Shown in pieces: positions 4,022 through 28,800 of a DNA stretch of 30,057 nucleotides (within the stretch, counting starts at the first letter, position 1; each line of letters opens with the position of its first letter). The notes beneath the pieces are model-generated. The model was not told the origin of the DNA. It did not search any database and saw nothing but the letters and a program-made list of their open reading frames with translations. Both the position numbers and the translations under genes were made by a program. The stretch comes from Macrostomum lignano (Eukaryota). The stretch lies in NCBI GenBank assembly GCA_002269645.1, contig NIVC01004960.1, forward strand, positions 1-30,057, written 5' to 3'.

Positions 4022-5952
4022 TGGTCATGGTTTGTGTAAGCTAAAGTTAGTGTAAATAGGCAAGTACAATGGCCATTAGTACAAAATTAAACGAATAATG
4101 CTCTAGAGCTCTAGAGTCTAGAGCTAAAAACTAAAAACTAAAAATACCAGCTCATCTATCTAGAGCTAGAGCTATATAGATAAGAACATATATTAGTTCA
4201 AATGATAAGCTACAATAAGAATTGTTGTTGCTACAATAAGAATTGTAGCTCATCATTTAAACTAATATAATTTTTTGCTAGATCACATTTTCATCTGATG
4301 GACATTCTGCTTTTTATCTTAGCTATTTCTTGGATATTCTACAAATCAAGAAAGAGACATTTATTATAACTAATGTACTTACTTATGTTTCCCCTCACTT
4401 TTGTTTCATAATCTCCTTAGTAAAATAGATGTATGTTTTATATTGAGGAAAGATTGTAAGACAAAAGTGAAGGTAAAGTGCAAAACCTTATTATAACAAA
4501 TATTTTTGTTCTCAACCCTACAAATTATTGATAGAGGTATAATGTTTAATGTGAACTGGGACTTTGTGTCTATAGAATAAAAATGATCAAATTGCTAATT
4601 TGGGACCCTACTATTCCATTCAATTTTGTGATACAGTTCTGATACAATTCTACTATTGGTATGACCATAATTCAAAACCTATAAGCTCTTTCAGTTTTGT
4701 CTTATAATCACTTACATATAATTTCATCATTTAAATGATTGTATAACAAAAGTGAATATAAGCTATGCTTCTATAACTTTTTATGCTACATTTTAATGCC
4801 TTGCAGTGATGATTTAAAGTGATTTTAAAAGTGAATAAAATGTAAAATAAATGTGTTAAGCAGTTTTTGGTATATTGGCATTCCTTTTGGTTCTTTTTTA
4901 ATAGGAATTTTTTAATTGAAGTCCCTAATTAAACCCTTGCTTGGGTCCCCTATCTTAAATCTAATTTGCATTATTTTTTGCCAAACCTAGCTTTCTACTA
5001 TGAGCAGAATGATATATCATTTGTGTATATAGATTTTTTTGGCTCCATTATATAAGCTTAAGTTGGCAGGTCTTTCATCTTTGGATTTTTAAGTATATGC
5101 TCAAAACTGTCTTTAATTTGAACTAATATGATGCTAAAAATGTGCTTTAACTTAAAAAGTAAAAACCACATGATCTAGGATAATCTTTTTTAACTTTATA
5201 TTTTTGCACTTTTAGGAAATTTTTTGTGCTATATTGACTGTTTGGCACCTAAAATTTCATTTTCAAGTACTGGAGGACTGGACTTATCAAAAAGTAACTT
5301 CCATTACTAAAGTCTGGCATTCTAAAAAAAGAACTGGAAAAAAGTGCTGCTTTGAAAAAAGTAACTTCTGGTACTAAACGTGCTGGAAGTGCCAGAACTT
5401 TGCCCAACACTGCAAAATAGTTTGATTGTGCCATGTGCTTGAACTTTTTTTTGCAAAAAACAAACAAAAATCTGTAATTTCCCTTAAAAATACCAATAAA
5501 ACTTGTATTTGAATCTGTTTCGTAGAAATACAATGTTAATGTATTTTAATTGAAGAAGCCGTCAATACACTAGCAAACAAAAAAGTGCTAATTCTGCATT
5601 ATGCACAAATGACCCAAAAAGGCTGAGTCTTGAAATTTTGAAATTGAGATTGAGATCTTGGTTGGACTCTAGATCAGACTTAATTTCAATAAGTATCTAT
5701 TAAAATATTGTAGTTGTTAAGTTAGGCAATTTTTATGAACTTTAAAATTAAAGGTTATATGAAACCTTATATATGTTGTTAATTAGTAAAAAATGGAAAA
5801 AAAGTCAACAGCTATTAAAATAGGTAGATAAAGCAATGAGCATTGCAAAATGTGCAGTTTTTCTCTTTGTATTGGGTTATAAATGAGAATTTTTTCAACT
5901 TCTAAGTTCCATTCTCTTAAGATATTAACAGTAAATATCATTCTCTTTTTAG

Positions 5953-10953: not shown

Positions 10954-13900
10954 GAACTGGCCTCGGAAGCATCGGGAGTTCGGTTTGCCCTGCCGGGCGA
11001 CTCGGACGCAGAGGAGGAGCCAGGCCGGTGCTTGCTGAAGAAGTCTATCAGCATCGATCCCTTCGATGTATCGTGCAAGGTGATGCTGGTTGGCGACAGC
11101 GGCACCGGCAAGACCAGCTTTATGCACCAGTTCAAGGACGCCAAGTTTCCCGGCAGCACTTTTATCAGCACGGTCGGGGTCGACTACAGGGTTCGCTGTA
11201 TTTTTGCACCTTCTTACTCTCAGTTCTTAAATCTTTTAAGACATACTAAGATGTGCGTCTCATGCAAATTAACTTAATAGATGATGGAGAACGATCTATG
11301 AGGTGCTATTTTTTCAGCGAGCATCTCGTTTCTTCCTGACGAGGTTTTCCCGTCCATTTTATGACGATGTTTCGGCGGCCTGGGGTATATATATGTCACA
11401 GCTTTTCTATTGCCGAGACTTCCCCATTGGAACCTTTCGAGCCAATTCATGTTTCATGCTGCTGAAATGTAGATACGTTAAAAAATTAAATCGGTCACAC
11501 TATAGTAGGGGCACTAACTTTTGAGGCTCATGGCTTCAAAGTGGTCCATTTAGCAGTTCCCTGCGCAGGTCAGTTCACTTAGCGCAAAGACAGCCCTAAG
11601 AGCGCGGTCATTCACCTGAAAGCCCCCCCCCCGGGACACACTTGCACCCTCCGGGCACTATGAGCCCACGATCGCAGAGCCCATGAGCCCATGAGCATAG
11701 TCTTTACAAATTCTATGCTTCAAGACTCGTACATGCAATCGTTTTGCAGCTTGGCAGCCTCCCAGATCCTCAGTCAGTAATTTATATATATGTTTATTCC
11801 AGAGCAAAACACTGCCAGTGGATGGCTACAGAGTTCGCTTTCAGGTAAAATATACGCTCGTACTTTTACAGTTCACTTTTAGCTCAATTAGAATAATTCC
11901 ATTTGCTCACTAAGCTAGGTTGACGAAATCTAGGCTGCTAGGTACGCATACGTATATGTTTCTACTGTATTGCCCAGGACTACGAGCTATTTCTGATGAA
12001 GAAACATGAAGTAAGAAAAATATAGAAGCTTCTAGAATGTGAATCATCTTTCTCTTAAGCAGATATTTATTCTTTCCACATTTTAAACCCAGAGAGCTGA
12101 AAACTTTGCGCTCATGCAATTGACCAACCATGCAGCACGTGTCCCATCTTTCAGGTCTGGGACACGGCCGGTACGGAGCGATATCGGAGCATCACCAGTG
12201 CGTACTACAGAGATGCTGACTGTGAGCATTGCAAACCGTTTCCTCTTTCACGCTCATGCGCAAGTGTATTGCTATCATGGAAATGTGAATTCCTACTTTA
12301 GTAGTTCCAAAGTGACAAAACCATTCGACTAGAGTTACGAGTAGTTAAAAAGTAAGCGTGATAAAAGGCAGCGGTCATTTGCTTAAATTCGAGTATTAAG
12401 AAGAACCGGCAGGTAGGCAAGAGGCTGAGATGGGAAGAATTAATTTAGACAAGTGCAGAAGCGAAAGCATAGGTCTGTTGAGTGACTGCATCAATAAAAA
12501 CAGTCTCAGTGAGCTGGAAGCTCTCAAACCGACTTTTTGCCGAGCACAGCTATTCTGCTATTCTACGATCTGACCAGCCGCCAGACATTCAGCAGTGTCC
12601 GCTCCTGGCTCACGGACATTCGCGAATACGGCTCTGAGGATGTATTCATCATTTTGGTGGCCAACAAGGCTGATCTGGACTCTGAAAGGCAGGTTAGCGC
12701 TCACGAAGGGCAGAGGCTAGCTCAGGTGGGTCACACAGGTTAATTCTGAGTTTTCAATCCAGAAAATCAAGGGGGTCATTTTGATTTCAACGCTGCCCAC
12801 AGGAGTGCGACATAATGTGCTTTATGGAGACGAGCGCCAGGACGGGGCACAATGTTGACCTCTGCTTCCAAACAATCGGACGGTAAGTTGCCTTTCTTCT
12901 TCTGCATAAATGCTCTTGAAAAGCGTGCTATAACGATTTCCACGTTAACTATGAAATTCAAGCCTTCACTGGTCCATCTCACCCAAGCTGCAGCGATCCG
13001 GACAAAGTAAATTTGTATTTATCAGCTTGAAATATCGGTGCGACGCATCGGTTTTCAGTTGGAGTTTTCAGTCATCACACGATCAGCATGATGGCAAATA
13101 CACGATCAGAATGATGGCAAATACACGATCAGCATGATGGCAAATACACAATCAGCATGATGGCAAATACACGATCAGCATGCTGGCAAATACACAATCA
13201 GAATGATGGCAAATACACAATCAGCACGATGGCAAATACACAATCAGCACGATGGCAAATACACGATCAGCACGATGGCAAATACACAATCAGCACGATG
13301 GCAAATACACAATCAGCACGATGGCAAATACACAATCAGAATGATGGCAAATACACAATCAGCATGATGGCAAATACACGATCAGCATGATGGCAAATAC
13401 ACAATCAGCATGATGGCAAATACACGATCAGCATGATGGCAAATACACAATCAGCACGATGGCAAATACACGATCAGAATGATGGCAAATACACAATCAG
13501 CATGATGGCAAATACACGATCAGCATGATGGCAAATACACAATCAGCACGATGGCAAATACACAATCAGCACGATGGCAAATACACAATCAGAATGATGG
13601 CAAATACACAATCAGCATGATGGCAAATACACGATCAGCATGATGGCAAATACACAATCAGCATGATGGCAAATACACGATCAGCATGATGGCAAATACA
13701 CAATCAGCACGATGGCAAATACACGATCAGAATGATGGCAAATACACAATCAGCATGATGGCAAATACACGATCAGCATGATGGCAAATACACGATCAGC
13801 ATGCTGGCAAATGCACGATCAGCATGATGGCAAATACACGATCAGCATGATGGCAAATACACGATCAGCATGATGGCAAATACACGATCAGCATGCTGGC

Positions 13901-14573
13901 AAATGCACGATCAGCATGATGGCAAATACACGATCAGCATGATGGCAAATACACGATCAGCATGATGACAGCTCAATTTTAGTGCACTACTGAATTCACC
14001 AATTACTCACTATGACTCACTCTTGGCTTAGGCAGCTGCAAAAATATTTCTGCACAGCTCTACTATCGCTAATGCAACGACGAACACAAAAACAGGCTGT
14101 CACAAAGGTTTGATATTGTAGCAGCGCCCGCAGGACCCGCATATGCTCAAGGCTTATGTTCCAGGCTGATGCAGAAACTCAGCGAAATAGATGTCACTTA
14201 ACCAGTGCATCAGAAATCAACTTGCCTCATGGGATCTGATGGTGCTAGTAAGGTCAGCTTCTGAATGTGGTTTGAATGGCTTCGCAAGGCTGAGGGGAGG
14301 AGGCTATGGCTGGTAGCTTTTGTTGTAAACGAAATCATGAAGAAATGTTGAAAAAAACAAACTTCGTTGCTTTTTTATTCCCTATTATACCCCGTTATTA
14401 ATAATTCCCCAAGATCTAAATAGCGGCGCTGATGGATTGAAACTTGACTTATCAATTCAATGATCTTCAGGAAGCTTCTGGCAAAGCAAAACTTCCAAAC
14501 CAGCGGCTCGATCGCCCAGGCGGACTCGCGGCACCAGAGCGGTCACCGGCCAGCGTCCTGCGGCTACTGCTAG
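10954..14573 (+). CDS. RAB26: Rab26/Rab37-like small GTPase with switch-II Q>T; start exon not identified
   Basis: Exons ~10954-11190, 11803-11844, 12155-12221, 12550-12725, 12803-12882 and 14471-14573, all GT-AG and phase-compatible. Motifs: GDSGTGKT, FISTVGVDYR, WDTAGTERYRS, NKAD, ETSAR; C-terminus ...HRPASCGYC*. The 'FKD..F...TFISTVG.D.R' segment and intron positions resemble Rab26/37. Confidence 0.92.
13077..13967. repeat. 23-bp minisatellite, 39 copies, with higher-order structure
   Basis: Unit ACAC(G/A)ATCAG(CAT/CAC/AAT)GATGGCAAAT in the last Rab intron. It explains the spurious ORF 13157-13390. Confidence 0.98.
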
Positions 14574-15348
14574 GCGGCTCATTGATGCTGAAAAACTGCC
14601 ATTTTATCAAAACATTCCTGATAAAGTCGCTCTTTATATTGTCGGGGTCTGATCATCCATGCCTTTTACAAACAGTTTATGGACTCGGAGCAGCTTTGCT
14701 GGCTCTTTGATGCCTTTTCATTTCTCTGTATAATTAGTGGCGACACCGGGGTAATCTTTAATAGCTGAAATTTTAATACTGCTCAAGCTCTAGGACGCAT
14801 TATAAAATGTAATTAACCTGTCAAAAAAACTCAAATCAGTTGTGAAGCCGAAGTCATTTTTGTAGCCTCCACTTCGGTGAACCCAATTTTCTAATTTGCC
14901 ATTTCAGAATCAGTTTCCTATGACTAGTCTTCAATCTTAGTGAAATCTCACTTATTGGTAAATAGGCGTGCAGCAGTGTCTCAATTATTCTTTGAAGAAA
15001 TTAGAAGGGCCCTAAATGTAATGAAGGACATGAAAGACTTTAATTAATAATGTCAAAGATCAAACGGTTTCAGAATTGGTGAAAAATTAGAGATTCTCTC
15101 AGATGCTGGCGATGTCTTGGTTGGCTACTAGGTAACGAGAGTAGTTCAGATGTCCAAAATTCTCTGAAAAATGTTCTGCTCAGGACTGATTGATCTGCCC
15201 TTTACTTAGAGCCATGTATGGGTTTGCCTTCCGAAGCACATACGGAATGCTCCTGTCACCAACATGTGTATGAGAGGACCTTGAGAATTTTTCCAGGCAT
15301 TCAAAACCTACAAAAGCCTGATTACTTTTTGCCTAGCTTTTAATTAAG

Positions 15349-16046
15349 TAAACTGAGTCTGGGAGACAGGTGTGAGTAGTCATCTACTCAAATCCCAGTA
15401 AACTGAGTCTGGGAGACAGGTGTGAGTAGCCATCTACTCAAATCCCAGTAAACTGAGTCTGGGAGACAGGTGTGAGTAGCCATCTACTCAAATCCCAGTA
15501 AACTGAGTCTAGGAGACAGGTGTGAGTAGCCTTCTACTCAAATCCCAGTAAACTGAGTCTGGGAGACAGGTGTGAGTAGCCATCTACTCAAATCCCAGTA
15601 AACTGAGTCTAGGAGACAGGTGTGAGTAGTCATCTACTCAAATCCCAGTAAACTGAGTCTGGGAGACAGGTGTGAGTAGCCATCTACTCAAATCCCAGTA
15701 AACTGAGTCTGGGAGACAGGTGTGAGTAGCCATCTACTCAAATCCCAGTAAACTGAGTCTGGGAGACAGATGTGAGTAGTCATCTACTCAAATCCCAGTA
15801 AACTGAGTCTGGGAGACAGGTGTGAGTAGCCATCTACTCAAATCCCAGTAAACTGAGTCTGGGAGACAGGTGTGAGTAGCCATCTACTCAAATCCCAGTA
15901 AACTGAGTCTGGGAGACAGGTGTGAGTAGCCATCTACTCAAATCCCAGTAAACTGAGTCTGGGAGACAGGTGTGAGTAGCCATCTACTCAAATCCCAGTA
16001 AACTGAGTCTGGGAGACAGGTGTGAGTAGCCCTCTACACAAATTCC
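15349..16046. repeat. 50-bp minisatellite, ~14 copies, each unit palindromic
   Basis: Unit TAAACTGAGTCTGGGAGACAGGTGTGAGTAGCCATCTACTCAAATCCCAG, period exactly 50 from 15349 to 15999, last copy degenerate. Lies between the convergent Rab and P450 stop codons. Confidence 0.98.
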
Positions 16047-16404: not shown

Positions 16405-18666
16405 CTAAAGCGTAAATGTCGCTCTCATCTGCTCCCTGGCCTGGAACTGAAAGACAACGTCCTCCGTCCAGGGCAGAATATCAACGCAGAAGGCGCTGGC
16501 GTCAACCTGAGCGCCTGTGCCTTCATCAGCGCGAATGCGGCACCGGCTCAGCAGCAGCACCAAGAACAGCTTAAGCTTCAACAGCCCGAGGCGCCGGCGA
16601 GGCCACAGACAGCCGAACGGCAGGGCCAGGAGCTCCGCATGCTGGGTCTCAAACAGAAAGCGCTGCGGCTGGAACGCCTGTGTGGCACAATGGACGGGAA
16701 TTCGCATTTCTGTACGGCAATAAAAGACTTTGTTGAAGCACACTAGAAATCATCCCAGTTAGGATTGAATTCGTTCTACGATACTTCAAGTGGGATTCAA
16801 GGTGTCGTGTCATTGCTGCCGCCAAGGAGATCGGAGTGTGCACTGTAAGGTCTGAACGACATCTCAAAAGTTCTGCTTTTGACTTCGAGACTCTACAAGT
16901 AGACCACCACCCTTACGTACGGCACCAACCCTCCTCCCCTGAATAAGTAACTTAGCAGACCGTATTTTAAGCTTAGCAAACCACACCGGATTATGATCTT
17001 CTATTCCAAAAGAATGAGATGACTTTAGATTTTTAAGATCTGAATGCTGCTAAATAGTTCGCTAGCTTTTTTACTAATAGCCATATCGAAGCGAATGTCA
17101 AAAGTAATCACTAATCTTAAGCTAGTACTGAGTGATTTAGACCCAGAATAACTAACAACATAGATCTATGTTCACCTGCACTTTCAATACTAACAGCCAA
17201 AAACTCACCTCTGGATTTTTGAACAGACTGGGGTCCATGTTCAATGAACGAAGCAGCACCCCGATCTCTTCACCGCTGTGCAAGCAGATGCCCTCAGAGT
17301 TCTTATGCGTCTGCAACAACAAGTCAGTTCCAGCTCTGAAGCTAACGAACTGCCCCGACGTGAGCCGGTAAACTTCTTTTACGAAGGCCTCTGAAATGAA
17401 AAGTTGACTCTGAGCTTCGCGAAATATTCAATAGAATCAAAGCAAGTGCCACCCACCAAGAAATGGCATCTCATCAAGCTCCTTGAGCGTCAATCGCCGA
17501 AATTCGTGCGGTCTTGCTGCGGTCGCCATGGAATCGATCTCGGCTAACAGGCTCTCCTGCACGGCTGTGTGAGATATGAGATAGTGAATTGCCCAGAAAG
17601 CTGCTTTCTTAGCACTGTAGTCGCTATAGAGACAGTTGATGCTGCAGCCGACAAAGGCTCTCCAAGACTTATTTGGATCTGGAAAATACATGAGTTAATT
17701 TTCTGAGATAACAAATAAAGCTATTGCTGCTAGTTTAGATTGGAGGTGTGACTTGTATTGGTCAGACCCGGTTTCCATGCTGTTCTGTTCCCTGTGCCAG
17801 TGTCTATGCTCATAGCGTTTTGGTTAGGACAGGCACTGCTGTTCTGTTCCCTGTGCCAGTGTCTATGCTCATAGCGTTTTGCTTAGGACGGCCGATATAT
17901 GGTAAATCAAACAGTCAACAAGCAGTTGCACGCACTCTTTAGGGCTCTGTTGAGTAAATCCTTGAAATGATGACATGGCTCAGCGGCAGCCAGCTCCTGG
18001 GCTGTCGGGTGCAGGCGATAGAGATTCTCCCAGGCTTTGTCCAGGTCGGCTTTACCCAATTTTGCTTGACTACCGGAAGTGCCACTGAAGAATGTCACAA
18101 AACCTTTTTCAAGCTCATGCAACGCTGCGTCCACAGCGTACGAGTGGAAGCGATGGTCCCGCTCGATTCCATAGATGCTGCAGATCGAGGAACCAAAGAA
18201 AGTATCCACGACAAAATAGGCTGCACTCTCTGGCGACCAGATATCCAAGAAGCTTCCTGAGCCGGCGCAGCGGACCCGCAGCATGCTGTCAACTTTGCTC
18301 GCGAAATTTCGCAGCTCCTCAAGAGCTCCTCTACCAGCTCCGATGCCAGCTCCGAGTCCATCGGCGGCATCAACGTCTGAGGCTGTGTCGCACCTGAACA
18401 CTTTTGCTCGTATTTTCGGGAGCAGTGGATGGATGAGTGGAGTGCGGTGATCTTTGGCAGCGTCCAACATCCAAGTCATCAGCTCCGGTGTGAGCACTAA
18501 ACCAAGTTTCTCTGTACGCTTGGAGCTGGGATAGGACACGCGCACCAGGTCTCCAATGTCTGAATGCGCTTGATGTAGCTTATTTAGTGCACCGGGATGA
18601 AGGCCCCAGCCATCTTTTGCGAACACTTCTGTCTCGATGCCATCCTCAGCCAGGCTTTGGTCTAAC
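16405..18666 (-). CDS. Cytochrome P450-fold protein (CYP7/8/39-like) with non-canonical heme motif; no start codon of its own
   Basis: Exons 18666-17936, 17678-17457, 17390-17209 and 16677-16405 are phase-compatible (2/1, 1/1, 1/0, 0/stop) and give ~469 aa without internal stops. Motifs: I-helix region ...DYSAKKAAFWAIHYLISH, K-helix KEVYRL (ExxR), DPSLFKNPEAFQPQRFL (PERF-like), LPFGCLWPRRRLGLLKLKLFLVLLLS (heme loop/L-helix). Confidence 0.9.
17778..17889. repeat. Two-copy tandem duplication (59-bp period) in P450 intron
   Basis: tgctgttctgttccctgtgccagtgtctatgctcatagcgttttg(g/c)ttaggac at 17778-17830 and 17837-17889, one mismatch. Confidence 0.95.
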
Positions 18667-18703
18667 CTGTTTGTTTGTTAATCAGTTAGATGTTTACGAG
18701 ATA

Positions 18704-20688
18704 TCATAAAAATTGGTAAATGAAAATCTCAATAATCTGATCCGATTGATACGAAATATGAGAGCCTACACACTGAATGAAGTGGCTAAAGCCTGGTTGA
18801 AGAATCAACCAGGTATCGTGTATGAAAATCTTTTTCCTGGGGTCATAAGTCAAAGCCGCATAGACAAAGAAAGAAAAACCAAGTCGTAAATGCACCAACT
18901 CTGTTTTGCTGGTGTTGATAACCGCCTCACAGAACTGGATGTCTGCCGAGGTGGCGGCGGCAGAGATGCACATTGGCTGGCCCGGGTGAGCCGCGGGCAT
19001 TGATGCGCACCGGGCCCGAGGCTGCGTAGGCATCTTTGTCGCCATGTGCAGTGGCGGCGGCGAGACCGAATCTGCCAGTGGCATGGCATTCTGCGAGATT
19101 GGCTTTGAAAGCTTTCCGAATGGTGCTAAAGAAATAGAGTCAGTATCGCTGGTTGTACTGCTTCTGGGAGCAAAAGACCGAGCAACGTTGCTGGATGCCG
19201 ACTGATTTACGAGAGCACGCTTCCGAGCTCTAGCCAGGCTTTCGAGTTTTTCGTTTGAATAGCTGACAAATATAATGTCTCCATCGTGTAGCTGGAGGCT
19301 GTCCGCCGTTGATTGATTTGAGATTTCCATCCACGGAACTGCATCTAAATGTGAAAACAGGACTGTTTAGCACAAGTTTGTCTGTCATCCACTTTTTTAA
19401 CTCTCGATTCGGGGACACCAGTCTAAAAAATGGGTAGATTGGGTCCATAGTTCTGGAGGTTGTATGGTAAATGGTAAATTGTGTCTGTGTTTTTTGAAGC
19501 AGACAAGGGTAGATTGTGTCTATGGTTTTGGAGGCAGACAATGGTAGATTGTGTCTATGGTTTTGGAGGCAGACAATGGTAGATTGTGTCTGTGGTTTTC
19601 GAGACAGACAATGGTAGAATGTCTCCGCCTTGGGCCTGGTTGAACGCAGAGGGTGCCTCTTCTGGCGTGGTGCACACGAATTTGAGCACAGCTCCGCATC
19701 ACTCGAGTTTTCAACGTTGAAGTGCCCAGAGCCCCAAGTACTATGTTAAAATTTCGTAGCTATTTTTTGCTTGTCAATCTTAAATGTCTTCTATTTTTTT
19801 GTTTTCGCACCGCAATCTTCATTGTTATGTGACGTGACTCAATTTGTGCGACAAGTAGTGAAGTAAAAAATGAACTTTAATATACTACTTCAGTATAATA
19901 TAATTTAAAGTAAGTTTAATAATATGCCATGGCTCACAGCTTACCGTCACTATGGTTTCCAAATATGTCGCCAAAGCCAGGCATGCCGTAGAAGCCGTCC
20001 AAACACAGTTTAAGAGCCTCACTTGTCGAGCCGAGCCCGAAGCGGCAGCAAAGACCTCGCAGAAGACAACCAAAGGGAACTCGTCGGTGCATTCGAACTC
20101 GCAGCTGAACAGTCCACAGCGACAAGTTTGAGTACGCTTCGCTCCCGTGGAACCGGCCAAGGCGCACAAACTGCCACAAGTAGTTCTCGTAATTGTGCTT
20201 CCTGACGCACAGCCAGAGGGTGACACTGTGCGCATCCCGACGAAGGCTCGTGGCCTCAAAGGACTGTCGCAAAGTCTTCTGGCAGCCGTGCAGGAAGCCC
20301 GGCTCTGGCTGTGGCCGTAGGCGGGTTTCTCTGGTTAGAAGCAATCTAAACCACTGGCACTGCGCGAGACTAGTAAGCTCTAGTAGTAGTTAGGAGTAGT
20401 TCTTGATTCTTGAACACTATATTTAAATGGCTTTACTATTCGCAGTCTCATTTTAGGCCTACAGTGGGCGTGAGTTGCGTATATTCAGGAGATTTTAAAA
20501 AGCCTCACCACTGGAACAGGACTTGAGCTCGCCGGTAGGGCGGTGGAAGAGTTATTTCGAGACCGCTGTGGTCCCGCTCTGCTGCAGTCACTGTAGATGC
20601 ACTTTTTCCACTCGCTATCGATTTCGAAATCGATAAAGATCTGATCGGAAGCAAGCTCTTCTGCAGCCGGTTCGGATGGATTAGACAT
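18704..20688 (-). CDS. Protein with integral SUMO/ubiquitin-like (Rad60/NFATC2IP-SLD-like) domain; 3' end may splice into the P450
   Basis: Exons 20688-20509 (ATG; GTG|GTGAGG), 20359-19945 (cgcgcag|TGC; G|GTAAGC) and 19344 onward (cacatttag|AT) are phase-compatible. Spliced sequence VQLRVRMHRRVPFGCLLRGLCCRFGLGSTSEALKLCLDG...MEISNQSTADSLQLHDGDIIFVSY follows the beta-grasp pattern (F/L.....L.......G......L..DG..I....T...L.L.DGD.I.V). The frame stays open to TGA at 18706-18704. Confidence 0.7.
19466..19624. repeat. Degenerate 35-bp tandem repeat (~4.5 copies) in intron
   Basis: AGACAATGGTAGATTGTGTCTATGGTTTTGGAGGC at 19501, 19536, 19571 and partial at 19606, plus decayed copies upstream. Confidence 0.9.
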
Positions 20689-22415
20689 TGGGGGGGGGGG
20701 GTTTGCTTTTTTGCTAAAACATAGAACTTAATGGTCCATAATTTTTAATCCATACAATATTACGTACTTCATCAAGCTTGACAAGCTGAAGTTTTTTTAA
20801 TTATCCCACAAAAGTTTGAGCATGCGGACGTCTATGGCACTGGCAGTTATGCTATCCAATGCAGTATTTTTTGAAAACTGCATTGTCGTAGGGCTATTTT
20901 TAGAAGTCTATTGTGTTCCCGACATATCCTACAAGTTGAATACCGAAAAAATGTAGATATCACCGGTTGAAAACCGCACTCAAACACTGTGTACAGGCGA
21001 AATAGACCTTTTTTTGTTGTTGTAGTTGTACAAAGCTTATTTATCTCTATTTTAAAGGGCTAGAACTCCTGTACCCAAAAGCCATTTGGGGCATTTTTGA
21101 AGGGCTATAGCTCGTGTACCCAAAGGCTCATTCACACTGCCACCGAATGAGGAATCAACTCACACTACTAATGTGCAAAAACGAATGAAAGTGGAAGTAC
21201 AAATGGTGTGATCACACGAATTTGGTCTTATTTTTAAAGTTGTTTAATTTAATTTACTTCATATAGAATTTATAGTCATATCACAAGCTTACGGCTTTCT
21301 ATATGCTTTCTATCTGGTTTTAAGTCTTAAATTTTAATAACGCGTTTATACATTTTTAAGACAAAGATACCTAAAACGCCATCAGTTATTTGTACGGCCA
21401 TCCAATTTTTCAGTAAGACAATCGCACAAGCCTTTCACTTTCATGCAGTGGCATGTATTGGATTCGTTGGATTGAAAATTCTTGCGATCGAAGACGGTTA
21501 ACAGTGGTTTAAGGGGATAAGGCAATCCATCAACCAAAAGCTTATTTTTTCTGTTACAAGCGCAGCAGCTTTGGTAAAGTCACTCGAGCATGAAACCGGC
21601 TGCAGCAATTAGTCCTGTTCTGCAGCAGCCCCTTTCCTGCTTTTCAGTCCTGCGCAGCACTCTGCCTGCTTGCCGGCACAGAGCACCGAGGCAGGCAACC
21701 CTTCGACCCATGCTATGCCGATTCGTTAGCTTGGGAAGCCACAGGAGTGGGGATTTGGGCGACCATTTGGGCTAGCTGCCATGCGTTAGGCAATATGGCT
21801 AGAGTTCGTTCTGGAAAAAAGCTCTTGTGTTCATGTATTATGATGAAAAATACAAAGTTCTGGGACTTATTTACACTGAAATGCGATACTTTGCCGTTCG
21901 CTCAAAACAAAGCCACTAAATTGTTTTGCTATCCAACCACAGACATCTTCAACGCAGAATCTTTCAGTGCAAAGTTCAAGCATACAGTCTCAACAGCATG
22001 AAGCACACTTTATAGCCTACTGTATATTTGAATTCAGAAGTAAAAATCAAATGCAAACACAAAAGTAATTACGCAAGCATATGCAACAATGAATCAGCAT
22101 ATTTCCATATTTTCCCCGAAGTGTATAGCCAGTGCAAACTTGATATTGAATTTTAACTGAATCTGTCTGCGAGAAGACTCCAAGTGGCGGGCTTTTAGAT
22201 TTTATACCGCGCAAAATGCATGGTAGCTGAGGTATCTAGGCATAGTTATTGCAAGAACCTGCGGGCTCTGCAGAGAATGCTAGTGTTTGGGGAAGCTGAA
22301 TATAACTATAAGCTATAGTTCATTTGCAGTGCAGGCTACCACGTCCACCTAGTATAAGAGTTGTTATGCCAATAGATAAAATGGTACATCGTACCTTGCA
22401 TTCAGCGGGCATCTC

Positions 22416-25400
22416 TTACACACGCAGGGGATTGATTTGCACGCGCTGCTGCTGAAAATTGTGATTGCGGTCACTGCTGTCACTTCTACTGTCACAGTTT
22501 TCATCAACAGAGCCTCCAGCAACACCGCAGCCATCAGCGACACCGCCTGCACTGTTCAACGGTGAAGCGCGCAGAACTTGCATAGGAAGGGACTCCGCGC
22601 GCTGTTGATGTCGCTGCTGCTCGGGACCCGGTGGCTGCCGAACACACAGCAGCTGCTGCTGCTGCTGCTGTAGCAAGAGCTGCCGGGTGCGGTCTGAGTC
22701 GGAGTCAAAGCGAATCACCCGGGCCGGTGGCTTCTTTCGTCGGCGCATGGTGTAGAGCATGTTGCGCCGAAAGTTGCGACTCCAAACGCAGTAAATGAAA
22801 AAGTTGATAGCGGAATTGAATAGTGTCAGTAGCGAGCCAACCGAGTACAAGTATGAGTTGAACCATGCGCTCTTGTCGAATTTTGTGCCCAGGAGCATGT
22901 GCCAGATGGTGCCAGGTATCTCGGTAAGCACGAACACGGCAATAATGACGACCAGCATTTTGGTCTCCTCAGTGCGCCGCGTGGTCTCCCGAGTAATGGC
23001 GGCGCGGATTCGCGAGGCCACCAGCAAACTTCGAATCAAAAGAATGTTAAGGGCCGTCAGGCATAACATAGGCCCAACTGTAAGCAGGAGAATGTACAGC
23101 AATTTCTTATATATAAACATGTACGCACTACCCAGACTTTTCGGGCGCGCCAAAATCAAGCTGATATTTAAGCACTTTATCGTATCCGATTTATACTCCA
23201 GGAATAGCGGGAAGTTGTAAAACATGGCCGTAATCGTGACGCATATGCAGTAAAGCCTTGACCGCTTCGGATTGCTGCGCTGCGTGGATAAGAACGGATT
23301 CTGCACAACCATATAGCGATCCAGTGCCACCAGCAGGACAATCCAGTTCCGACCTGTTCGTGCAACATTGCCCAGATAATAAACAGCTGGCAGGATTAAC
23401 TGAATGCCGGGACTGGCATGGAGCCATGTCTGCAGAGTTACGCCATGTGAGTCCTGGATGATGGAGCCCAGGCCCATGTACACAACGAAGTAGGGCGCCG
23501 ACAGTAAGATGAAGGTCAAATCGACTGCAATGAAGAAAATCAGTTGGTTTGGGTGTCGGTAGAATGTCTTGCCACTGGATAGTGACAGATTCAGGTGCAG
23601 TGTTTCGTTAACGACCGTTCTTACGCGGGTAAAAGCGTACTTTAATCATTACGCTCGAAATAAAACAGGGGACAATTTGAAGAGGGAAAGTTTGAAGTAA
23701 AACTTTTCCCACATATCCAATAGCATATCCAATAGCATAGCATACTAATAAGTTCGTTGATTGACAGCGCCTGAATCCACTTAAGATTTTTTATTACAGC
23801 TGTTACAGAGAAGAAACAGAAACTTAATTTATCCCGCATGTGTGCTTCAAGTTCAGCTACAGTGGAGGAAGGCTGCAATTTTTTATAAATAAGAACAAAA
23901 TTAGGACAAAAGAGTGTATTCAACAAGCGTATCATTTGCATCCCGGTGCATCAAACTCTGTGCCGGATGATGAGTTCCAGAGGCCCAACCCAGCTAGAAT
24001 TGGTTTTCTGTACTCGTACACGCTGATCAGAACTAATCATGCATTGATCAAAATGGACTTCAATATGGTGCTTAGGCAACAGTAGCCAAGTTACCGGCTG
24101 ACAACTCAGTGGCGACCCTGACCCTTTGGAATCACAGCCTACTGCAAACGTCATGCATTGGTAGATCGAAGAATTAATTAATTTCCGCTGAAATTAACGA
24201 AAAGCGAAATCGAAATGTCACCTGAAATCAGTTGTACAACAGGACTGAAAATGTCAGTACTTTATTGGGTCTCGTATACATACGAGCGTATGCGCCGAAC
24301 AAAAAGAACTCTTGTTTAAACGATTTCGTTATAAATGACTAGATTATTTTTTTATAAGAAAATTTCGACGGGCAAAGTCGAAAGTGTGCCAAGCTTAAAT
24401 ACAGGGAAAAGTCAAACTGTTCTTAATCACTGGTTAATATATACATACTCAGCAGGAGCCTTGAGTTGCTCGTGAGTTACTCGTAGCTGCAAGCGCGTTC
24501 CCTCCCGGGGTCCAAAAATGACTCAAGTTGGAATTTTCTTCTGATAAACAGTCTCTCGGGATGCCAGTCAAGAGAAACGAAAGGATGATTAAGCTGCATC
24601 AGAGCAAAGGAGCAAAAGGGCTCTCGCCGGCGAATCTCCTGGCTAATCAAGCCGAACGCAAGTTGCGATATTAACCGGGGGTTTGTATGCTCAATCAGGC
24701 AAAGCGAAAAGAGAAAAAGCTTCTTGCTCCCTGGCTCACTTTGCTAACTTTTTTCTCCCCCCCCTCCTCCACTGGCCTCACAGTCGGCCACTCACTCTTG
24801 GTACGAGCTGGAAACACTCAGCCAGTGCGCGCTCCAGGGGGCGATCGGGATTTAAAGAAGTACCGATAGCGAGCTCAAAAATCAAGATGAACAACTTTTC
24901 AAAAGACGAGTGCGAGAGTTGAGATCGGGCCGTGAGCAAACGCGTCAATCCGAAGTGAAACGTCTCAGTTTAACTAAGCCTTGGCTCTGGCGATCGAGCT
25001 TCTTTTGCTGTAAACGGGAGATTTTCTTTCACGCTAAATCCTTTCTTGCACTAAAGAATCCTTATACATATTGTTCCTCACGTCACATTTCTTATCTTGC
25101 ACTACAAGAAGTTCACTAAAAGCATTTTGATAAAAGCAACACGACGTCCATTCTCGGGTTGATAAAATATGCATCAAATTAGGATGCATATCTATGCTGG
25201 TAAATCTAGTGAAAAAAAGAAATAGTATCTCGAATAGCATAAAGCTAAATAGAAGGGGATTAGGTGGGGAAGCAGCCACCAGTCAGTTAGAAATGAGCTC
25301 AGAGCTCCTGAAATTCGCGAAAGGCTCTGTTTTCTAGAGAAATGAGGAATTTATGTAAAGGTGGCGATTTTTGGGAGTGGCATATTTCTGGGGTTAATAA

Positions 25401-25826
25401 TCTGAGTTAGTAAAAAATCTGAACGTTCAAGCCACGACGCTAAGTCGAAACCTGAAATACTGTTAGTCTTGGGAAGAAAAAGATTGTGCGGAGGTGCCTT
25501 TCTAGACCCGAAAAGGTAATCCCATCGTTTGCACCCAGTATTTTTTGTACTAACAAAAAGGAAATAAAAAGCTCACAGATTGCAAGAGCCAGGAGTAGAA
25601 TACTCATTGATGATCGGCGCACATCTCGCTTGAGCACGACAATAGACAGTGAATTGAGAAGCAGGCCAAGCAAGCAGATTGCGGAGGATAGACCAACGTC
25701 AGTGACAAGAATGAAGCGGCGCTCGCTGTCAGTGAAGAGACGTAAGCTTTTAGCGCAATCGTCCTCGGTGCCATTGCCAGTAGCGTTGGCTTCTTCAGAT
25801 GAGTCGTTAAAGAATGCACCTTTCAT
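22416..25826 (-). CDS. Class A (rhodopsin) peptide GPCR, FMRFamide/sex-peptide-receptor-like, 2 coding exons
   Basis: Exon 25826-25577 (MKGAFFNDSSEEANATGNGT... with 3 N-glycosylation sequons; TM1 LLGLLLNSLSIVVL; T|GTGAGC) joins exon 23524-22416 (cattgcag|TC). This yields LALAIFD (TM2 LAxxD), LDRY, FPLFLEY, FVLTEIP and NSAINFFIY (TM7), ending QINPLRV*. Confidence 0.95.
22653..22670 (-). repeat. (CAG)6 coding microsatellite, polyQ in GPCR tail
   Basis: ctg x6 on the + strand encodes the QQQQQQ of LLLQQQQQQLL. Confidence 0.9.
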
Positions 25827-28800
25827 GCAGTGATAGAGCTGAAGAGTCAAGGGCCAAAAGTGCCGACAGATTACTTTGCCTTGCCTTGGCGTTTCGATCC
25901 GGTTGATTTAGGATCTCTCAGCTGCTAGTAGGCGGGGCAGGTCCGACTGTATGCGGTATACCATCTAATGCACAGAACTATCGCCTGAGGTCCAATGGGG
26001 CAAGCAAGCTCTTGGTGCATGGCTTTCAGTATTCCCTGTATTTTAGCCTCAGCCAATCAACTATGAGAGAGGCATCTCTGGCCGACTGTTCTGATGCTAA
26101 AATCCCAAAACAAGAAACTGCGAAATGAATTCACAGACCAAGTTTGGTGGGATGGTTTGTGTGATGAATAAGTTAGACAAACTTCCAAGCTTGAATAAGA
26201 CAAAATTCTAGAAGTTTGCCATGCAGTTTCATCAGTTTTGAGAAAGAAGTCGCTAACCTTGTCGCTAAAGCACACGGTCATTGATCTTTTTCACCCCAAT
26301 GCAATGACTCACCCCAACCGATGACCCAGTTCAAATAAAGCATCGTGTTATACGGCTAGCTAGGAAAGTGCACATGCAAAGGTAACTGCAAAAGGAAGCA
26401 GCTAGCGTTGTGTGCTCCTGTGAAACTGGTACTAAAGTCTAACAAGAATGGGCCATAAAAGTCTTCAGTGCCGATGCATCCTACGAGAATCAACCACGTA
26501 GATAGAGGTCGTAAAGAGTTGCCGGCTTTTTACAATCAAAGGTCAAACAGCCAGGGTGGCATTACCACTTTGATTAGTAAGTAGCTGGTGTACACATAGC
26601 CAGAGCAATTACTGTTTGAACAAGCAGGAGTTATAAAGTCACTTTATCTTTAAACAGGAATTCAGGTGCCACGGCGAGGTGAAACGAATCTGCCGTATTA
26701 CCTGTATAAGTACACAATAATAAGTAAACTGAGACCAAGGAATGCCATTTGCCCCTGTGTCAATAGAATATACAAGCATGCCACTAAATCTGATAGTTTC
26801 TGAAATATGCCGACGCTTGCCCTGCGCATCGGTCCTTGGTCTTCAGGACTACAGTAATGGGCATTGGGAGCGGGCATGCCACATAAGTGAAGTCTAGGGA
26901 AAAAGAATTGAAAGCACTGATTCCTTCTTCTTGCTTCTCCGACAGCCCATAATTGGAAGCAGGCGTGCAAAGGGCAGCTGGAAAGGCTGGGAATTCGGGT
27001 TGAACGGGATGGTGCTGGGCATTTTGCGTGTTCCCAGTGCCTCTTCGTTTTTTCGATCTGTTGATCTCTTGTAAAGCAGATTGTGTGGTGACGGACGCGC
27101 AAGAATTTTTCCAGCAGATTTCGTGTGCACCGTAGTGTCTCTGTTTCTCTTCGATCTGCTGGTCTCTCTTGTAAAGCGCAAAGCGTAGCAAGCGCAAGAA
27201 TTTGTCAAACCAAATGAGTGACATTGTGAGTGATAAGCGTGCTTACTTTATCTGTTCATACGAAGTTAAATTCATCCAAGTTCGAAACAGTTTACCCTTG
27301 CCCTTATCCACATGTACTATTCAACGTTCCAAACTTTCATAGCAAAACATAGCATAGCAAAGAAATTCTACTGTTACTATTAAAGCTACAGAATTATTAA
27401 TTAGACTTGCTATTACCCACACTGCAACTCATTCTCAGACGGTCAGAGCCAGAACACAAATTAAAAAGCTTAGTCTAAAGTCTGCTATCCAGAAGCTGAA
27501 CACAGAAGTCCCACCCTCGCACGCCAAATGGAATCAGGGCGTTCATTGAGAGCAAAAGCAGGGCATATATGCGTTGATTACCATTCAAATGAATACAGCG
27601 GCGGACACCTGATAGCTGGTAGCTCAAAAGTTTCTGGACCCATCGGAACCCGAACTCGCCATCAAAACCTGAGCCAACGCAATCCTTAAGCACCCTTGCT
27701 TATTTCGCAAACAGCTGCTCAATTTGATCGTTAATTAAAACCCAACAAGCTGCTGGTCCCCGAGACCATATGGTTAAAGTTGAATAACTTTGATAGAGCC
27801 AGAATTACAAACTGGCCTCAACCAGGGATCGGAGGTCCGGCTTTGGAGCCTGACATGTACTTCAGAGCTTTAATGCATACGGTGTTACTTCAATGAAATC
27901 TGAAGCTTGACTAAATTCAACTCTGGACTGTCTGTGCAAATCCTCTCGGGTGACAATACAACTAGTTTACGGTCAAACTGACATGGATGAGCACGGCTCT
28001 AATGAAGCACAAGAAAACAGCGACCACTTGCTTTAAGAAATTTAAGTGTTTGCTAGACTTTAAGCACACGGCCCAATGAACTTTATAAATAGGGAACAGC
28101 ATCACGTACTTTTACTTAGCTCTACGGACACAGCAGTATTATAGACAATCATGCGTGTGACGAAGTGATGATTCGGTTAATTTTCAACATCGATGAAAAG
28201 ATTTCCAACCATACTTAAGACACAATGGCCCGACTGAAGAAGCCGATGTTTACAATGGCCCGAGGCCAGTAAGCAGGAAGGGCGAGGCCCACGAACAGCA
28301 TCTACTTGCACGAACGACACCGCCAGGACTTGACTCCACAGCCAGTCAGCCTCTGCACAGGGATTGAGTGGAACGGGATGCAGTTACAGGGGTTGCCCAA
28401 TTCAGAGTAGCGCTTCGGCTGGGCCAGCTGCAAGGACTGAGGAGGGTTTCTAGGCTTGAGCACGCAAGCAGCAGTTCTCTGCAGTTTGAAATCATTCTTT
28501 TCCTAAGATTCTGACACCACGGTTATTCTGCATGAATCGTGGGTGACAAATTTATGAAGCCTTTCTGAAACAACGCTTTTGATCAAAAGTAATTTGTTGA
28601 ATTTTTTAGCATTAGCAGAGCAGCCATTTAGCAGCTAATTGAGCTTTTGTGAGCATTTTTTAATTTTCACGTTTTATAGCTTCTAAAAAAACTTTTCAAA
28701 ATTAATCGCAGAAAGAGCAATTATTTTGCAAAGTTTAATTTAGAGTGTTGCATTAGTCTTCACTATTTTTAAATAAGCTAAAATTATTTGATTCTACTCA

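What the first reader, a model, noticed from the sequence alone, without database searches (positions are those of the whole stretch)
16590..16625. Intact P450 gene with Trp at the apparent axial heme-cysteine position
Seen: CCG TTC GGC TGT CTG TGG CCT CGC CGG CGC = PFGCLWPRRR, followed by a normal L-helix (LGLLKLKLFLVLLLS). Established: P450s ligate heme through the Cys of FxxGxxxCxG. As I recall it, the shortened invertebrate CYP7-like form is FGSLCPG(K/R)R. On that alignment Cys>Trp (16605-16603) and Gly>Arg, while a Cys sits two residues earlier (16611-16609). The gene otherwise looks intact, with 4 phase-correct exons and ExxR and PERF-like motifs kept. Inference: either a non-catalytic P450 (ligand sensor or scaffold) or one with a register-shifted thiolate ligand.
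Basis: partly seen in the sequence, partly recalled or inferred. Interest (0 to 1): 0.8.

Follow-up and report, generated by a model that had tools for sequence, protein, structure and literature searches.

The report
Flatworm P450 paralogue lacking heme cysteine
A gene of the flatworm Macrostomum lignano encodes an intact, selectively maintained cytochrome-P450-fold protein in which the cysteine that normally holds the heme iron is a tryptophan, so it is most likely a non-catalytic "pseudo-P450", a kind so far described in bacteria and fungi.

Summary
On the minus strand, 16620-16591 reads PFGCLWPRRR, with TGG at 16605-16603. The window is a Macrostomum lignano contig, and the gene is BOX15_Mlig033662g3 (798 aa, 7 GT-AG exons). 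Its closest relatives are two canonical M. lignano P450s and a Littorina "CYP7A1-like" protein. All three carry a short Cys loop, xG(S/V)LCPGxR. The window protein aligns to them without gaps, which puts Trp733 in the Cys column and Arg735 in the Gly column. Three genomic copies and models from a second assembly all keep the Trp, so it is not an assembly error.

The gene is not decaying. All three copies are intact, dN/dS between them is 0.1-0.3 (P about 1e-3 against neutrality), and the GenBank model comes from transcripts. AlphaFold gives a confident P450 fold (pLDDT 86.8), closest to CYP7A1, CYP8B1 and PGIS.

The protein evolves fast. It breaks 8 of 18 positions that are invariant in 15 clan-7 relatives, including the I-helix Asn. 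It has no membrane anchor and carries a roughly 340-aa N-terminal extension with no detectable homologues.

Best reading: a heme-thiolate-less, non-catalytic P450-fold protein. A register-shifted Cys731 ligand is less likely. Heme binding is untested.

The parts
16405..20688 (-). Complete coding region of BOX15_Mlig033662g3 (798 aa) in 7 exons: 20688-20509, 20308-19945, 19344-18900, 18666-17936, 17678-17457, 17390-17209, 16677-16405 (stop TAG 16407-16405)
   Evidence: The spliced translation equals P0001 exactly and every intron is GT-AG. P0001 is 100% identical and its source contig is 30057 nt, the window itself.
18900..20688 (-). Exons 1-3. They encode a roughly 340-aa N-terminal extension that replaces the usual membrane anchor and PPLVPG hinge. 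It has no recognisable domain and no hydrophobic anchor.
   Evidence: No Pfam or PDB hit. The maximum Kyte-Doolittle 19-mer score is 1.24, against more than 2.0 in the paralogues. A 12-nt poly-C run lies just upstream of the ATG.
16405..18666 (-). Exons 4-7, which encode most of the P450 fold (P0001 residues about 332-798)
   Evidence: Pfam PF00067 at 66-67.5 bits against a cut-off of 22.8. AF2 pLDDT 86.8 and pTM 0.91. Best Foldseek matches are CYP7A1, CYP8B1 and PGIS at TM 0.70-0.75.
16591..16620 (-). Degenerate Cys loop PFGCLWPRRR (residues 728-737)
   Evidence: Gap-free alignment to FGSLCPGKR and YGVLCPGQR.
16603..16605 (-). TGG = Trp733, in the column of the axial heme-ligand Cys. It is one nucleotide away from TGT/TGC.
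16609..16611 (-). TGT = Cys731, two residues N-terminal of the ligand column. The relatives have Ser, Val or Thr here.
16597..16599 (-). CGC = Arg735, in the column of the conserved Gly/Ala of the C-x-G motif
   Evidence: Gly in at least 90% of 58 P450s.
17614..17616 (-). Ser595, in the column of the clan-7 I-helix Asn (CYP8B1 N286), which is invariant in the 15 relatives. The I-helix reads LYSDYSA, against LHVNYNT or LWASQANT in the relatives.
   Evidence: PMC9463588.
17365..17376 (-). K-helix ExxR motif (EVYR, residues 653-656), retained
   Evidence: E and R are invariant across all alignments.
16657..16668 (-). PERF-like motif PQRF (residues 712-715), retained
   Evidence: R714 invariant.

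Best explanation
The locus encodes a functional but non-catalytic member of the cytochrome P450 fold. It is a Macrostomum-lineage paralogue of a lophotrochozoan clan-7 (CYP7/8/39-like) P450 subgroup with a short Cys loop.

Shown here:
- The protein keeps the fold determinants: the ExxR and PERF-like motifs, the L helix, and a confident P450 model.
- It has Trp in place of the thiolate ligand and Arg in place of the adjacent Gly.
- It has lost further family-invariant residues, including the I-helix Asn.
- It has lost the N-terminal membrane anchor and carries a roughly 340-aa extension of unknown fold.
- It has evolved much faster than its sister genes, yet its three genomic copies are under purifying selection.

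Inferred, not shown:
- It cannot form a heme-thiolate centre, so it cannot perform P450 oxygen chemistry.
- The bulky Trp733 and Arg735 side chains occupy the proximal heme face.
- The protein is soluble and works by binding a lipid or sterol-like ligand or a partner protein in the former substrate or heme cavity. This would resemble the heme-less bacterial P450-derived glycosyltransferase activators.
For: Identity and integrity:
- 100% match to M. lignano PAA46266.1.
- The 7-exon GT-AG model is exact.
- Three genomic copies of 798 codons, none with a stop or frameshift.
- GenBank models for this assembly derive from a genome-guided transcriptome (PMC5730564).

Trp in the Cys column:
- HMMER pairwise alignments.
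- MAFFT with 7, 15 and 58 other P450s.
- The stretch from FG to ILP..DV is visibly gap-free against Littorina P0011.

Family placement:
- The exhaustive HMMER search gives M. lignano P0007 (E 8e-31) and P0010 as nearest relatives, then Littorina 'CYP7A1-like'. All three have the short loop and a Cys.

Loss of active-site constraint:
- The window protein keeps 22 of 36 (61%) clan-7 columns that are at least 90% conserved. The 15 relatives keep 80-100%.
- It breaks 8 of 18 columns invariant in the others: G347K, P527S, N595S, R665F, H698N, C733W, G772C and P778W.
- Tajima relative-rate test: 106 against 30 unique changes, p = 7e-11.

Still under selection:
- pN 0.2-0.4%, against pS 1.1-2.0% and intron divergence 1.8-2.6%.
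- Binomial P(nonsyn <= observed | neutral) is 2e-4 to 1e-3.

Fold:
- AF2 pLDDT 86.8 and pTM 0.91, with the Cys-loop block lowest in its neighbourhood (67 against 92-95).
- Foldseek top hits are CYP7A1, CYP8B1 and PGIS.

No transmembrane anchor.

Precedents for heme-less P450 folds:
- EryCII/PDGAF (PMC3391682; PMC11703216).
- The fungal 10R-DOX-1 P450 partner that lacks the thiolate ligand (PMC13049297).
Against: - No direct evidence on heme content. AlphaFold2 models carry no cofactor and the tool returned no coordinates, so the positions of Trp733 and Cys731 relative to a heme site could not be examined.
- A Cys lies two residues upstream, and the loop is the least confident part of the model, so re-registration cannot be excluded.
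- Native non-Cys heme ligation (Ser, Sec; putative Glu, Arg) exists in bacterial CYPs.
- The selection evidence rests on only about 20 substitutions among copies that are about 98% identical and may undergo gene conversion.
- No orthologue from another species was found, so the age of the Cys-to-Trp change is unknown and no long-term dN/dS is available.
- Expression is inferred from the annotation method, not from reads seen here.
- The proposed binding or scaffold role is by analogy only.
Confidence: 0.6

Rival explanations
1. Register-shifted thiolate: Cys731 (FGC) moves into the axial position and the protein is a working heme-thiolate P450 with an unusual proximal loop.
For: A Cys lies only two residues from the canonical position and is kept in all copies. 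The Cys loop is the least confident region of an otherwise confident model, so its conformation is open. The subgroup's loop is already three residues shorter than in vertebrate clan-7 enzymes, and those relatives still carry the ligand Cys.
Against: The alignment from the FG through the L helix to the C-terminus is gap-free against the relatives, so the L-helix register is fixed and Cys731 corresponds to a Ser/Val/Thr position. Gly735Arg and Trp733 put two bulky residues where the helix N-terminus packs against heme. Several other family-invariant residues are also lost, among them the I-helix Asn, the beta1-4 Arg and the HxDP His, and so is the membrane anchor used by microsomal P450s. This pattern suggests that the constraint on catalysis as a whole was lifted.
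Confidence: 0.1
2. Heme protein with non-thiolate or no protein ligation (for example a five-coordinate heme, or Arg, water or another residue as ligand). It would carry out non-monooxygenase chemistry or sense gases or ligands, like the recently described bacterial non-canonical CYPs.
For: Native Ser- and Sec-ligated CYPs exist, and subfamilies with Glu, Arg, Phe, Leu or no residue at the axial position have been catalogued (PMC11703216). Three Arg residues follow the Trp. The fold, including helices I, K and L around the heme site, is confidently predicted.
Against: Trp is not a known iron ligand and is not among the 20 published subfamilies. The family-invariant beta1-4 Arg and the HxDP His are lost. 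Their role in propionate binding is inferred from general P450 knowledge. Nothing positive points to heme binding.
Confidence: 0.12
3. Young non-functional gene: a recently disabled P450 duplicate (unitary pseudogene) that is still transcribed and has not yet accumulated stops.
For: The catalytic residue is lost, evolution is strongly accelerated, and no orthologue was found outside M. lignano. Divergence among copies is small (about 1.5-2.5%), so there has been little time for disabling mutations since the duplication.
Against: The protein is only 20-25% identical to its nearest paralogues over the MAFFT alignment (29% by phmmer). Even so, it keeps a 798-codon ORF, six canonical introns and the fold-defining motifs, which is not expected after such long neutral drift. 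Non-synonymous changes between copies are 4-8 times rarer per site than synonymous or intronic ones. The N-terminal exons are also conserved relative to the introns. AF2 predicts a well-packed fold.
Confidence: 0.13
4. Sequencing or assembly artefact: the true codon is TGT/TGC.
For: A single third-position change separates TGG from TGT/TGC.
Against: Three distinct loci in GCA_002269645.1 encode the same Trp, as do the WormBase/UniProt models from the earlier assembly. The loci differ at other sites and in intron lengths. The neighbouring Gly-to-Arg change and the other active-site substitutions are independent changes that point the same way.
Confidence: 0.02

Closest known systems
Short-loop lophotrochozoan clan-7 P450s (M. 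lignano A0A1I8ITJ4 = P0007 and Mlig023623 = P0010; Littorina saxatilis 'cytochrome P450 7A1-like' XP_070192908 = P0011)
   Same: They are the nearest sequence relatives. They share the three-residue-shorter Cys loop xGxL[C]PGxR, the I-helix KKA.FWAI stretch, the ExxR and RF motifs, and the C-terminal ILP..D motif.
   Different: The relatives have the axial Cys, the Gly/Ala at +2, the I-helix Asn, the YPP...H.D motif, an N-terminal transmembrane anchor and the EPPLVPG hinge. The window protein lacks all of these, has a roughly 340-aa extension, and evolves about 3.5 times faster.
Vertebrate clan-7 enzymes CYP7A1, CYP8B1 and CYP8A1 (prostacyclin synthase)
   Same: They are the best structural matches to the AF2 model (TM 0.70-0.75). 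HMMER aligns the window protein to CYP7A1 right to the C-terminus.
   Different: They are true heme-thiolate enzymes with the longer FGxGxxxCPG loop and the I-helix Trp/Asn pair (PMC9463588). Sequence identity is only 15-19% over the Foldseek alignments.
PDGAF / EryCII-DesVIII family (bacterial P450-derived glycosyltransferase activating factors)
   Same: They have the P450 fold, lack the axial Cys and are heme-free. They act as non-catalytic partners or chaperones. The I, J, K and L helices are conserved although the cofactor is lost (PMC3391682).
   Different: They are actinobacterial, are encoded next to their glycosyltransferase partner, and lack the C/C' helices. They have an independent evolutionary origin. 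No partner is known for the flatworm protein.
Bacterial non-canonical CYPs (ncCYP subfamilies A-T; Nguy et al. 2024)
   Same: They are CYP homologues with a residue other than Cys at the aligned axial position.
   Different: All 880 are bacterial. The residues listed are Glu, Arg, Ser, Sec, Ala, Phe, Leu, Ile/Val or none, and Trp is not among them. Some are proven heme proteins, whereas heme binding here is unknown.
Fungal 10R-dioxygenase (PpoC / 10R-DOX-1) C-terminal P450 domain
   Same: It is a eukaryotic P450-homologous domain without the heme-thiolate ligand, retained as part of a functional protein (PMC13049297).
   Different: It is fused to an active dioxygenase domain and belongs to a different CYP lineage. 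The N-terminal extension here has no recognisable domain.

Membership tests
Cytochrome P450 superfamily (fold; Pfam PF00067) | Significant match to the P450 profile | tested here: met
   66-67.5 bits against a gathering cut-off of 22.8, but only profile positions 283-440 are matched.
Cytochrome P450 superfamily (fold; Pfam PF00067) | P450 three-dimensional fold | tested here: met
   AF2 pLDDT 86.8 and pTM 0.91. All top Foldseek PDB hits are P450s, at TM up to 0.75. This is a prediction, not an experiment.
Cytochrome P450 superfamily (fold; Pfam PF00067) | K-helix ExxR and PERF/PxRF motifs | tested here: met
   E653/R656 and R714 fall in invariant columns.
Cytochrome P450 enzymes (heme-thiolate monooxygenases) | Axial Cys in the FxxGxxxCxG (here xGxLCPGxR) loop | tested here: not met
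   Trp733 is in the Cys column and Arg735 in the Gly column.
Cytochrome P450 enzymes (heme-thiolate monooxygenases) | I-helix catalytic or active-site residues (the clan-7 version is Trp/His ... Asn) | tested here: not met
   LYSDYSA against LHVNYNT or LWASQANT. Asn, invariant in the 15 relatives, is Ser595 here.
Cytochrome P450 enzymes (heme-thiolate monooxygenases) | Heme binding with a 450-nm reduced-CO spectrum | not testable with these tools
   Needs recombinant protein.
Cytochrome P450 enzymes (heme-thiolate monooxygenases) | N-terminal membrane anchor and proline hinge of microsomal (class II) P450s | tested here: not met
   No hydrophobic 19-mer scores above 1.24 in the first 350 residues, against more than 2.0 in P0007, P0010 and P0011. 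The EPPL motif is absent.
CYP clan 7, short-loop lophotrochozoan subgroup | Closest sequence relatives belong to the group | tested here: met
   Exhaustive HMMER search: P0007 at 8e-31, P0010 at 3e-19, P0011 at 4e-17. The names come from the sources.
CYP clan 7, short-loop lophotrochozoan subgroup | Cys loop three residues shorter than in vertebrate clan 7 | tested here: met
   Same loop length as P0007, P0010, P0011, P0030 and P0110.
CYP clan 7, short-loop lophotrochozoan subgroup | C-terminal GxxILPP..D motif | tested here: inconclusive
   ILP and D are kept, but the invariant Gly and second Pro are replaced (G772C, P778W).
CYP clan 7, short-loop lophotrochozoan subgroup | Structural nearest neighbours are clan-7 enzymes | tested here: met
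   CYP7A1, CYP8B1 and CYP8A1 are the top Foldseek hits.
PDGAF (EryCII/DesVIII-type heme-less P450 homologues) | Absence of the axial Cys | tested here: met
PDGAF (EryCII/DesVIII-type heme-less P450 homologues) | Bacterial origin, encoded beside a partner glycosyltransferase, and common descent with EryCII | tested here: not met
   This is a flatworm gene with introns. Its nearest relatives are animal clan-7 CYPs. The ORFs scanned around it are GPCR-like, REEP-like and transposase-derived.
Non-canonical CYPs with an alternative heme ligand (Nguy et al. 2024) | [quoted passage not shown] | tested here: met
   Trp733.
Non-canonical CYPs with an alternative heme ligand (Nguy et al. 2024) | Heme bound through the alternative residue | not testable with these tools
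   No cofactor modelling or spectroscopy is available. Trp is not a known iron ligand (established chemistry).
Pseudogene | Disabling mutations (stops, frameshifts, broken splice sites) | tested here: not met
   None in the three copies. All introns are GT-AG.
Pseudogene | Neutral substitution pattern (dN/dS about 1; exon divergence equal to intron divergence) | tested here: not met
   dN/dS is 0.10-0.30. pN is 0.2-0.4% against 1.8-2.6% in introns. Binomial P is 1e-3 or lower. The number of substitutions is small.

The most novel reading that the evidence does not exclude
An animal P450-fold protein that still binds heme or another tetrapyrrole or lipid ligand without a thiolate, with Trp733 stacking on or capping the cofactor. 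It would act as a soluble sensor or carrier (for example of heme, sterol or oxylipin) in a sterol- and possibly heme-scavenging flatworm. That would make it the first natural non-thiolate CYP described in Metazoa.
Probability: 0.12. Interest if true: 0.8.

Novelty: new variant of a known kind. Interest (0 to 1): 0.5.

Why it matters
The axial cysteine is treated as the defining, near-universal residue of P450s. Natural exceptions have been catalogued only in bacteria (PDGAFs and ncCYPs) and in a fungal fusion enzyme.

This is an animal example with several notable features:
- It is intact and under purifying selection.
- It is present in three copies.
- It has lost its membrane anchor and gained a new N-terminal region.

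If confirmed, it would show that P450 folds are recruited to non-catalytic roles in Metazoa too. M. lignano has transgenesis, and knockdown studies are reported in it, so the role of such a pseudo-P450 could be tested there directly.

It is also a practical warning for CYPome annotation: this protein passes the Pfam P450 threshold and would be counted as an enzyme.

Tried and rejected
- Word-indexed protein searches found only M. lignano self-hits plus one Littorina protein. The search with the N-terminal extension returned nothing at all, not even the parent protein, so its negative result carries little weight.
- Looking up the WormBase model P0002 on contigs found nothing on record.
- Reading off the residue aligned to Trp733 from pairwise phmmer alignments of about 150 hits was misleading. 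For P450s with the long canonical loop, HMMER pairs 'GPR' with 'WPR' and pushes the Cys into insert columns. I therefore relied on multiple alignments and on the short-loop relatives.
- The first AF2 run, with a 6-sequence alignment, was poor (pLDDT 60.8, Cys-loop region below 50), and its Foldseek matches were weak (TM 0.45-0.49). It was replaced by the 59-sequence run.
- Model coordinates are not exposed, so distances from Trp733 and Cys731 to a heme site could not be measured.
- Literature searches for the gene ID, for the GSLCPG motif and for Cys-less animal CYPs found nothing.
- Assembly error was considered and rejected, because several loci and a second assembly agree.
- A bacterial or contaminant origin was rejected, because the gene has introns and its paralogues are flatworm genes.
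Full report
**1. Observation**

The minus strand of the window at 16620-16591 reads CCG TTC GGC TGT CTG TGG CCT CGC CGG CGC, which is PFGCLWPRRR. It is followed by LGLLKLKLFLVLLLSRC.

All have GT-AG borders and consistent phases. Their translation hits Pfam p450 (PF00067) at 67.5 bits against a cut-off of 22.8, although only over profile positions 283-440.

**2. Identity of the locus**

The translation is 100% identical to Macrostomum lignano PAA46266.1 (BOX15_Mlig033662g3, 798 aa). Its source contig is 30057 nt long, so it is the window itself.

The full gene has seven coding exons: 20688-20509, 20308-19945, 19344-18900, and the four above. All introns are GT-AG, and the spliced translation equals the GenBank protein exactly.

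GenBank models for this assembly were derived from a genome-guided transcriptome built with StringTie/TACO on RNA-seq (PMC5730564). The spliced structure is therefore RNA-supported, although I did not see reads myself.

Two further genomic copies exist on other contigs of the same assembly: g1 on a 111.7-kb contig and g2 on a 43.6-kb contig. They are 98.2-98.9% identical in DNA, introns included. This fits the known large-scale duplication in the DV1 line. Gene models from the earlier assembly (UniProt A0A1I8J0L4, A0A1I8FUR6, A0A1I8J3I2) encode the same PFGCLWPRRR. An assembly error at the TGG codon is therefore very unlikely.

**3. Family and alignment**

An exhaustive HMMER search of 1.84 billion cluster representatives found 581 P450 hits. 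The closest non-self hits are:
- P0007, M. lignano A0A1I8ITJ4 (E 7.8e-31, 29% identity).
- P0010, M. lignano Mlig023623 (3.4e-19).
- P0011, Littorina saxatilis 'cytochrome P450 7A1-like' (4.4e-17).
- Two unnamed relatives, P0019 and P0030.

These share a Cys loop three residues shorter than in vertebrate CYP7/8/39: YGVLCPAAV, YGVLCPGQR, FGSLCPGKR, FGSLCPGKR and HGSLCPGEK.

The window protein aligns to them without gaps from FG through the L helix to the C-terminal ILP..DV motif. That puts Cys731 under Ser/Val/Thr, Trp733 under the axial Cys and Arg735 under Gly/Ala. HMMER alignments to CYP7A1 (3SN5) and CYP11A1 also pair the Trp with the Cys. In a 59-sequence MAFFT alignment the column at Trp733 is Cys, and the column at Arg735 is Gly, in at least 90% of sequences. 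All 15 clan-7 relatives examined have Cys.

For scale, a published survey found Cys at this position in more than 99.5% of about 200,000 CYP homologues. All 880 exceptions were bacterial, and none was reported with Trp (PMC11703216).

**4. Is it a decaying gene?**

The three copies have no stop or frameshift.

| Measure between copies | Value |
|---|---|
| pN | 0.22-0.44% |
| pS | 1.1-2.0% |
| Intron divergence | 1.8-2.6% |
| dN/dS | 0.10-0.30 |
| Window vs g2, P450 part | 9 synonymous, 3 non-synonymous |
| Binomial P of so few non-synonymous changes under neutrality | 2e-4 to 1e-3 |

The counts are small, about 20 events in all, but they are consistent for both the N-terminal and the P450 parts. 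The protein is only 20-25% identical to its nearest paralogues over the MAFFT alignment (29% by phmmer). Even so, it keeps a 798-codon ORF and six canonical introns, which long neutral drift would not allow. A pseudogene is therefore unlikely.

**5. Signs that catalysis, not the fold, has been given up**

- In a leave-one-out comparison with 15 clan-7 relatives, the window protein keeps 22 of 36 (61%) columns that are at least 90% conserved. The others keep 80-100%.
- It breaks 8 of 18 columns that are invariant in all the others: G347K, P527S, N595S, R665F, H698N, C733W, G772C and P778W.
- N595 is the I-helix Asn that protrudes into the active site of CYP8B1, CYP8A1 and CYP7A1. The clan-7 'ceiling' Trp/His position is Tyr here (PMC9463588).
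- R665 corresponds to the beta1-4 Arg, which in many P450s binds a heme propionate. That role is my inference from general P450 knowledge and was not tested here.
- Fold-defining residues are kept: ExxR, the R of PERF, and the W of the I-helix FW.
- A Tajima relative-rate test with Littorina as outgroup gives 106 unique changes on the window lineage against 30 on P0007 (p = 7e-11).
- The paralogues have a clear N-terminal transmembrane anchor (Kyte-Doolittle 19-mer above 2.0) and an EPPLVPG hinge. The window protein has neither (maximum 1.24 in the first 350 residues).
- Instead it has a roughly 340-aa N-terminal extension with no Pfam or PDB match.

**6. Structure prediction**

With a 6-sequence alignment AF2 was poor (pLDDT 60.8). 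With 59 sequences the P450 domain was modelled confidently (mean pLDDT 86.8, pTM 0.91). The L helix scores 94-95, and the Cys-loop block (model residues 391-400) is the local minimum at 67.

The best Foldseek matches in the PDB are CYP7A1 (3SN5, 3DAX), CYP8B1 (7LYX) and prostacyclin synthase (3B6H, 2IAG), at TM 0.70-0.75. This supports the clan-7 placement.

The geometry of Trp733 and Cys731 relative to a heme site could therefore not be examined.

**7. Interpretation**

The most economical reading has three steps:
- A duplicate of a short-loop clan-7 P450 in the Macrostomum lineage lost the thiolate ligand by a single-nucleotide change (TGY to TGG) and the neighbouring Gly (GGC to CGC).
- It was then released from catalytic constraint.
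- It lost its membrane anchor, acquired a new N-terminal region, and has since been maintained by selection as a soluble P450-fold protein with a non-catalytic role.

By analogy with the heme-less bacterial PDGAFs such as EryCII (PMC3391682) and with the fungal 10R-DOX-1 P450 partner that lacks the thiolate ligand (PMC13049297), I propose that it binds a ligand or partner through the former active-site or heme cavity. This last step is inference only.

I give the overall reading (a functional gene that is not a thiolate P450 enzyme) about 0.6. The rivals are:
- Cys731 as a register-shifted ligand (about 0.1). It is disfavoured by the gap-free L-helix register, by Arg735 and by the other losses.
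- Heme bound without a thiolate (about 0.12).
- A young pseudogene (about 0.13).
- A sequencing artefact (about 0.02).

**8. Novelty**

Cys-less P450 homologues are a known kind in bacteria and in one fungal enzyme class. I found no described animal example and no natural Trp at this position, but the literature search was limited.

The protein is not a member of the PDGAF or ncCYP families by descent. It is a divergent member of animal CYP clan 7 that fails the defining enzyme feature. I rate it a new variant of a known kind, with moderate interest of 0.5. The finding is solid at the sequence level and experimentally tractable in M. lignano, but heme status and function are untested.

Noticed in passing
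window 17778-17889 (intron 4) and 19470-19622 (intron 2); L001, L002: The introns of the P450-like gene contain tandem repeats: a 59-bp unit x1.9 and a 35-bp unit x4.4. Copy number differs between the three gene copies. Intron 4 is 254, 611 and 488 nt, and intron 2 is 594, 840 and 5561 nt, so copy g1 carries an insertion of about 5 kb.
   Followed up: partly
window 6583-7066, 13077-13967, 15347-16043: Three long, very regular intergenic tandem arrays: 40 bp x12, 23 bp x39 and 50 bp x14, at 94-97% identity. This fits the high tandem-repeat content reported for this genome.
   Followed up: no
window 20689-20700 (minus strand, just 5' of the ATG at 20688): A run of 12 C residues sits immediately upstream of the annotated start codon (…AAACCCCCCCCCCCCAATG). 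Whether this is the true 5' end or start of the gene was not checked.
   Followed up: no
window 5883-6455 (+): An ORF of 190 aa with a strong TB2/DP1/HVA22 (REEP-like ER-shaping protein) domain, E 2e-29.
   Followed up: partly
window 585-1082 (-): An ORF with a ZSWIM1-3 RNaseH-like / MULE transposase-type domain (E 5e-22). It is probably a transposon-derived sequence at the contig edge.
   Followed up: partly
window 22416-23519 (-) and 25440-25850 (-): Upstream of the P450-like gene lies a rhodopsin-family GPCR ORF (7tm_1, E 2e-13) with a Gln-rich C-terminal tail. Further upstream is a weak (below Pfam cut-off) 7TM_GPCR_Srw-like N-terminal fragment, possibly part of a second receptor gene.
   Followed up: partly
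P0002, P0003, P0006 (UniProt A0A1I8J0L4, A0A1I8FUR6, A0A1I8J3I2): UniRef names these near-identical M. lignano models 'Protein kinase domain-containing' and 'FERM domain-containing' protein. The only Pfam domain on record for them is p450, and they differ from the GenBank model only by skipped exon segments. The names look spurious.
   Followed up: partly
L001 17595-20667, L002 20116-24397: In both other copies the next gene downstream is a 191-aa Arf/Ras/Roc-type small GTPase on the opposite strand. I did not check whether the window has the same neighbour below 16400.
   Followed up: no
P0001 residues 61-181 (window 20308-19945, exon 2): The annotated exon-2 peptide has an odd composition, rich in R, L, C and W. 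A second long ORF overlaps it in another frame (19885-20259). Only two substitutions among the copies fall in this exon, both synonymous in the annotated frame. The reading frame, or even the coding status, of the N-terminal extension is therefore weakly supported.
   Followed up: partly
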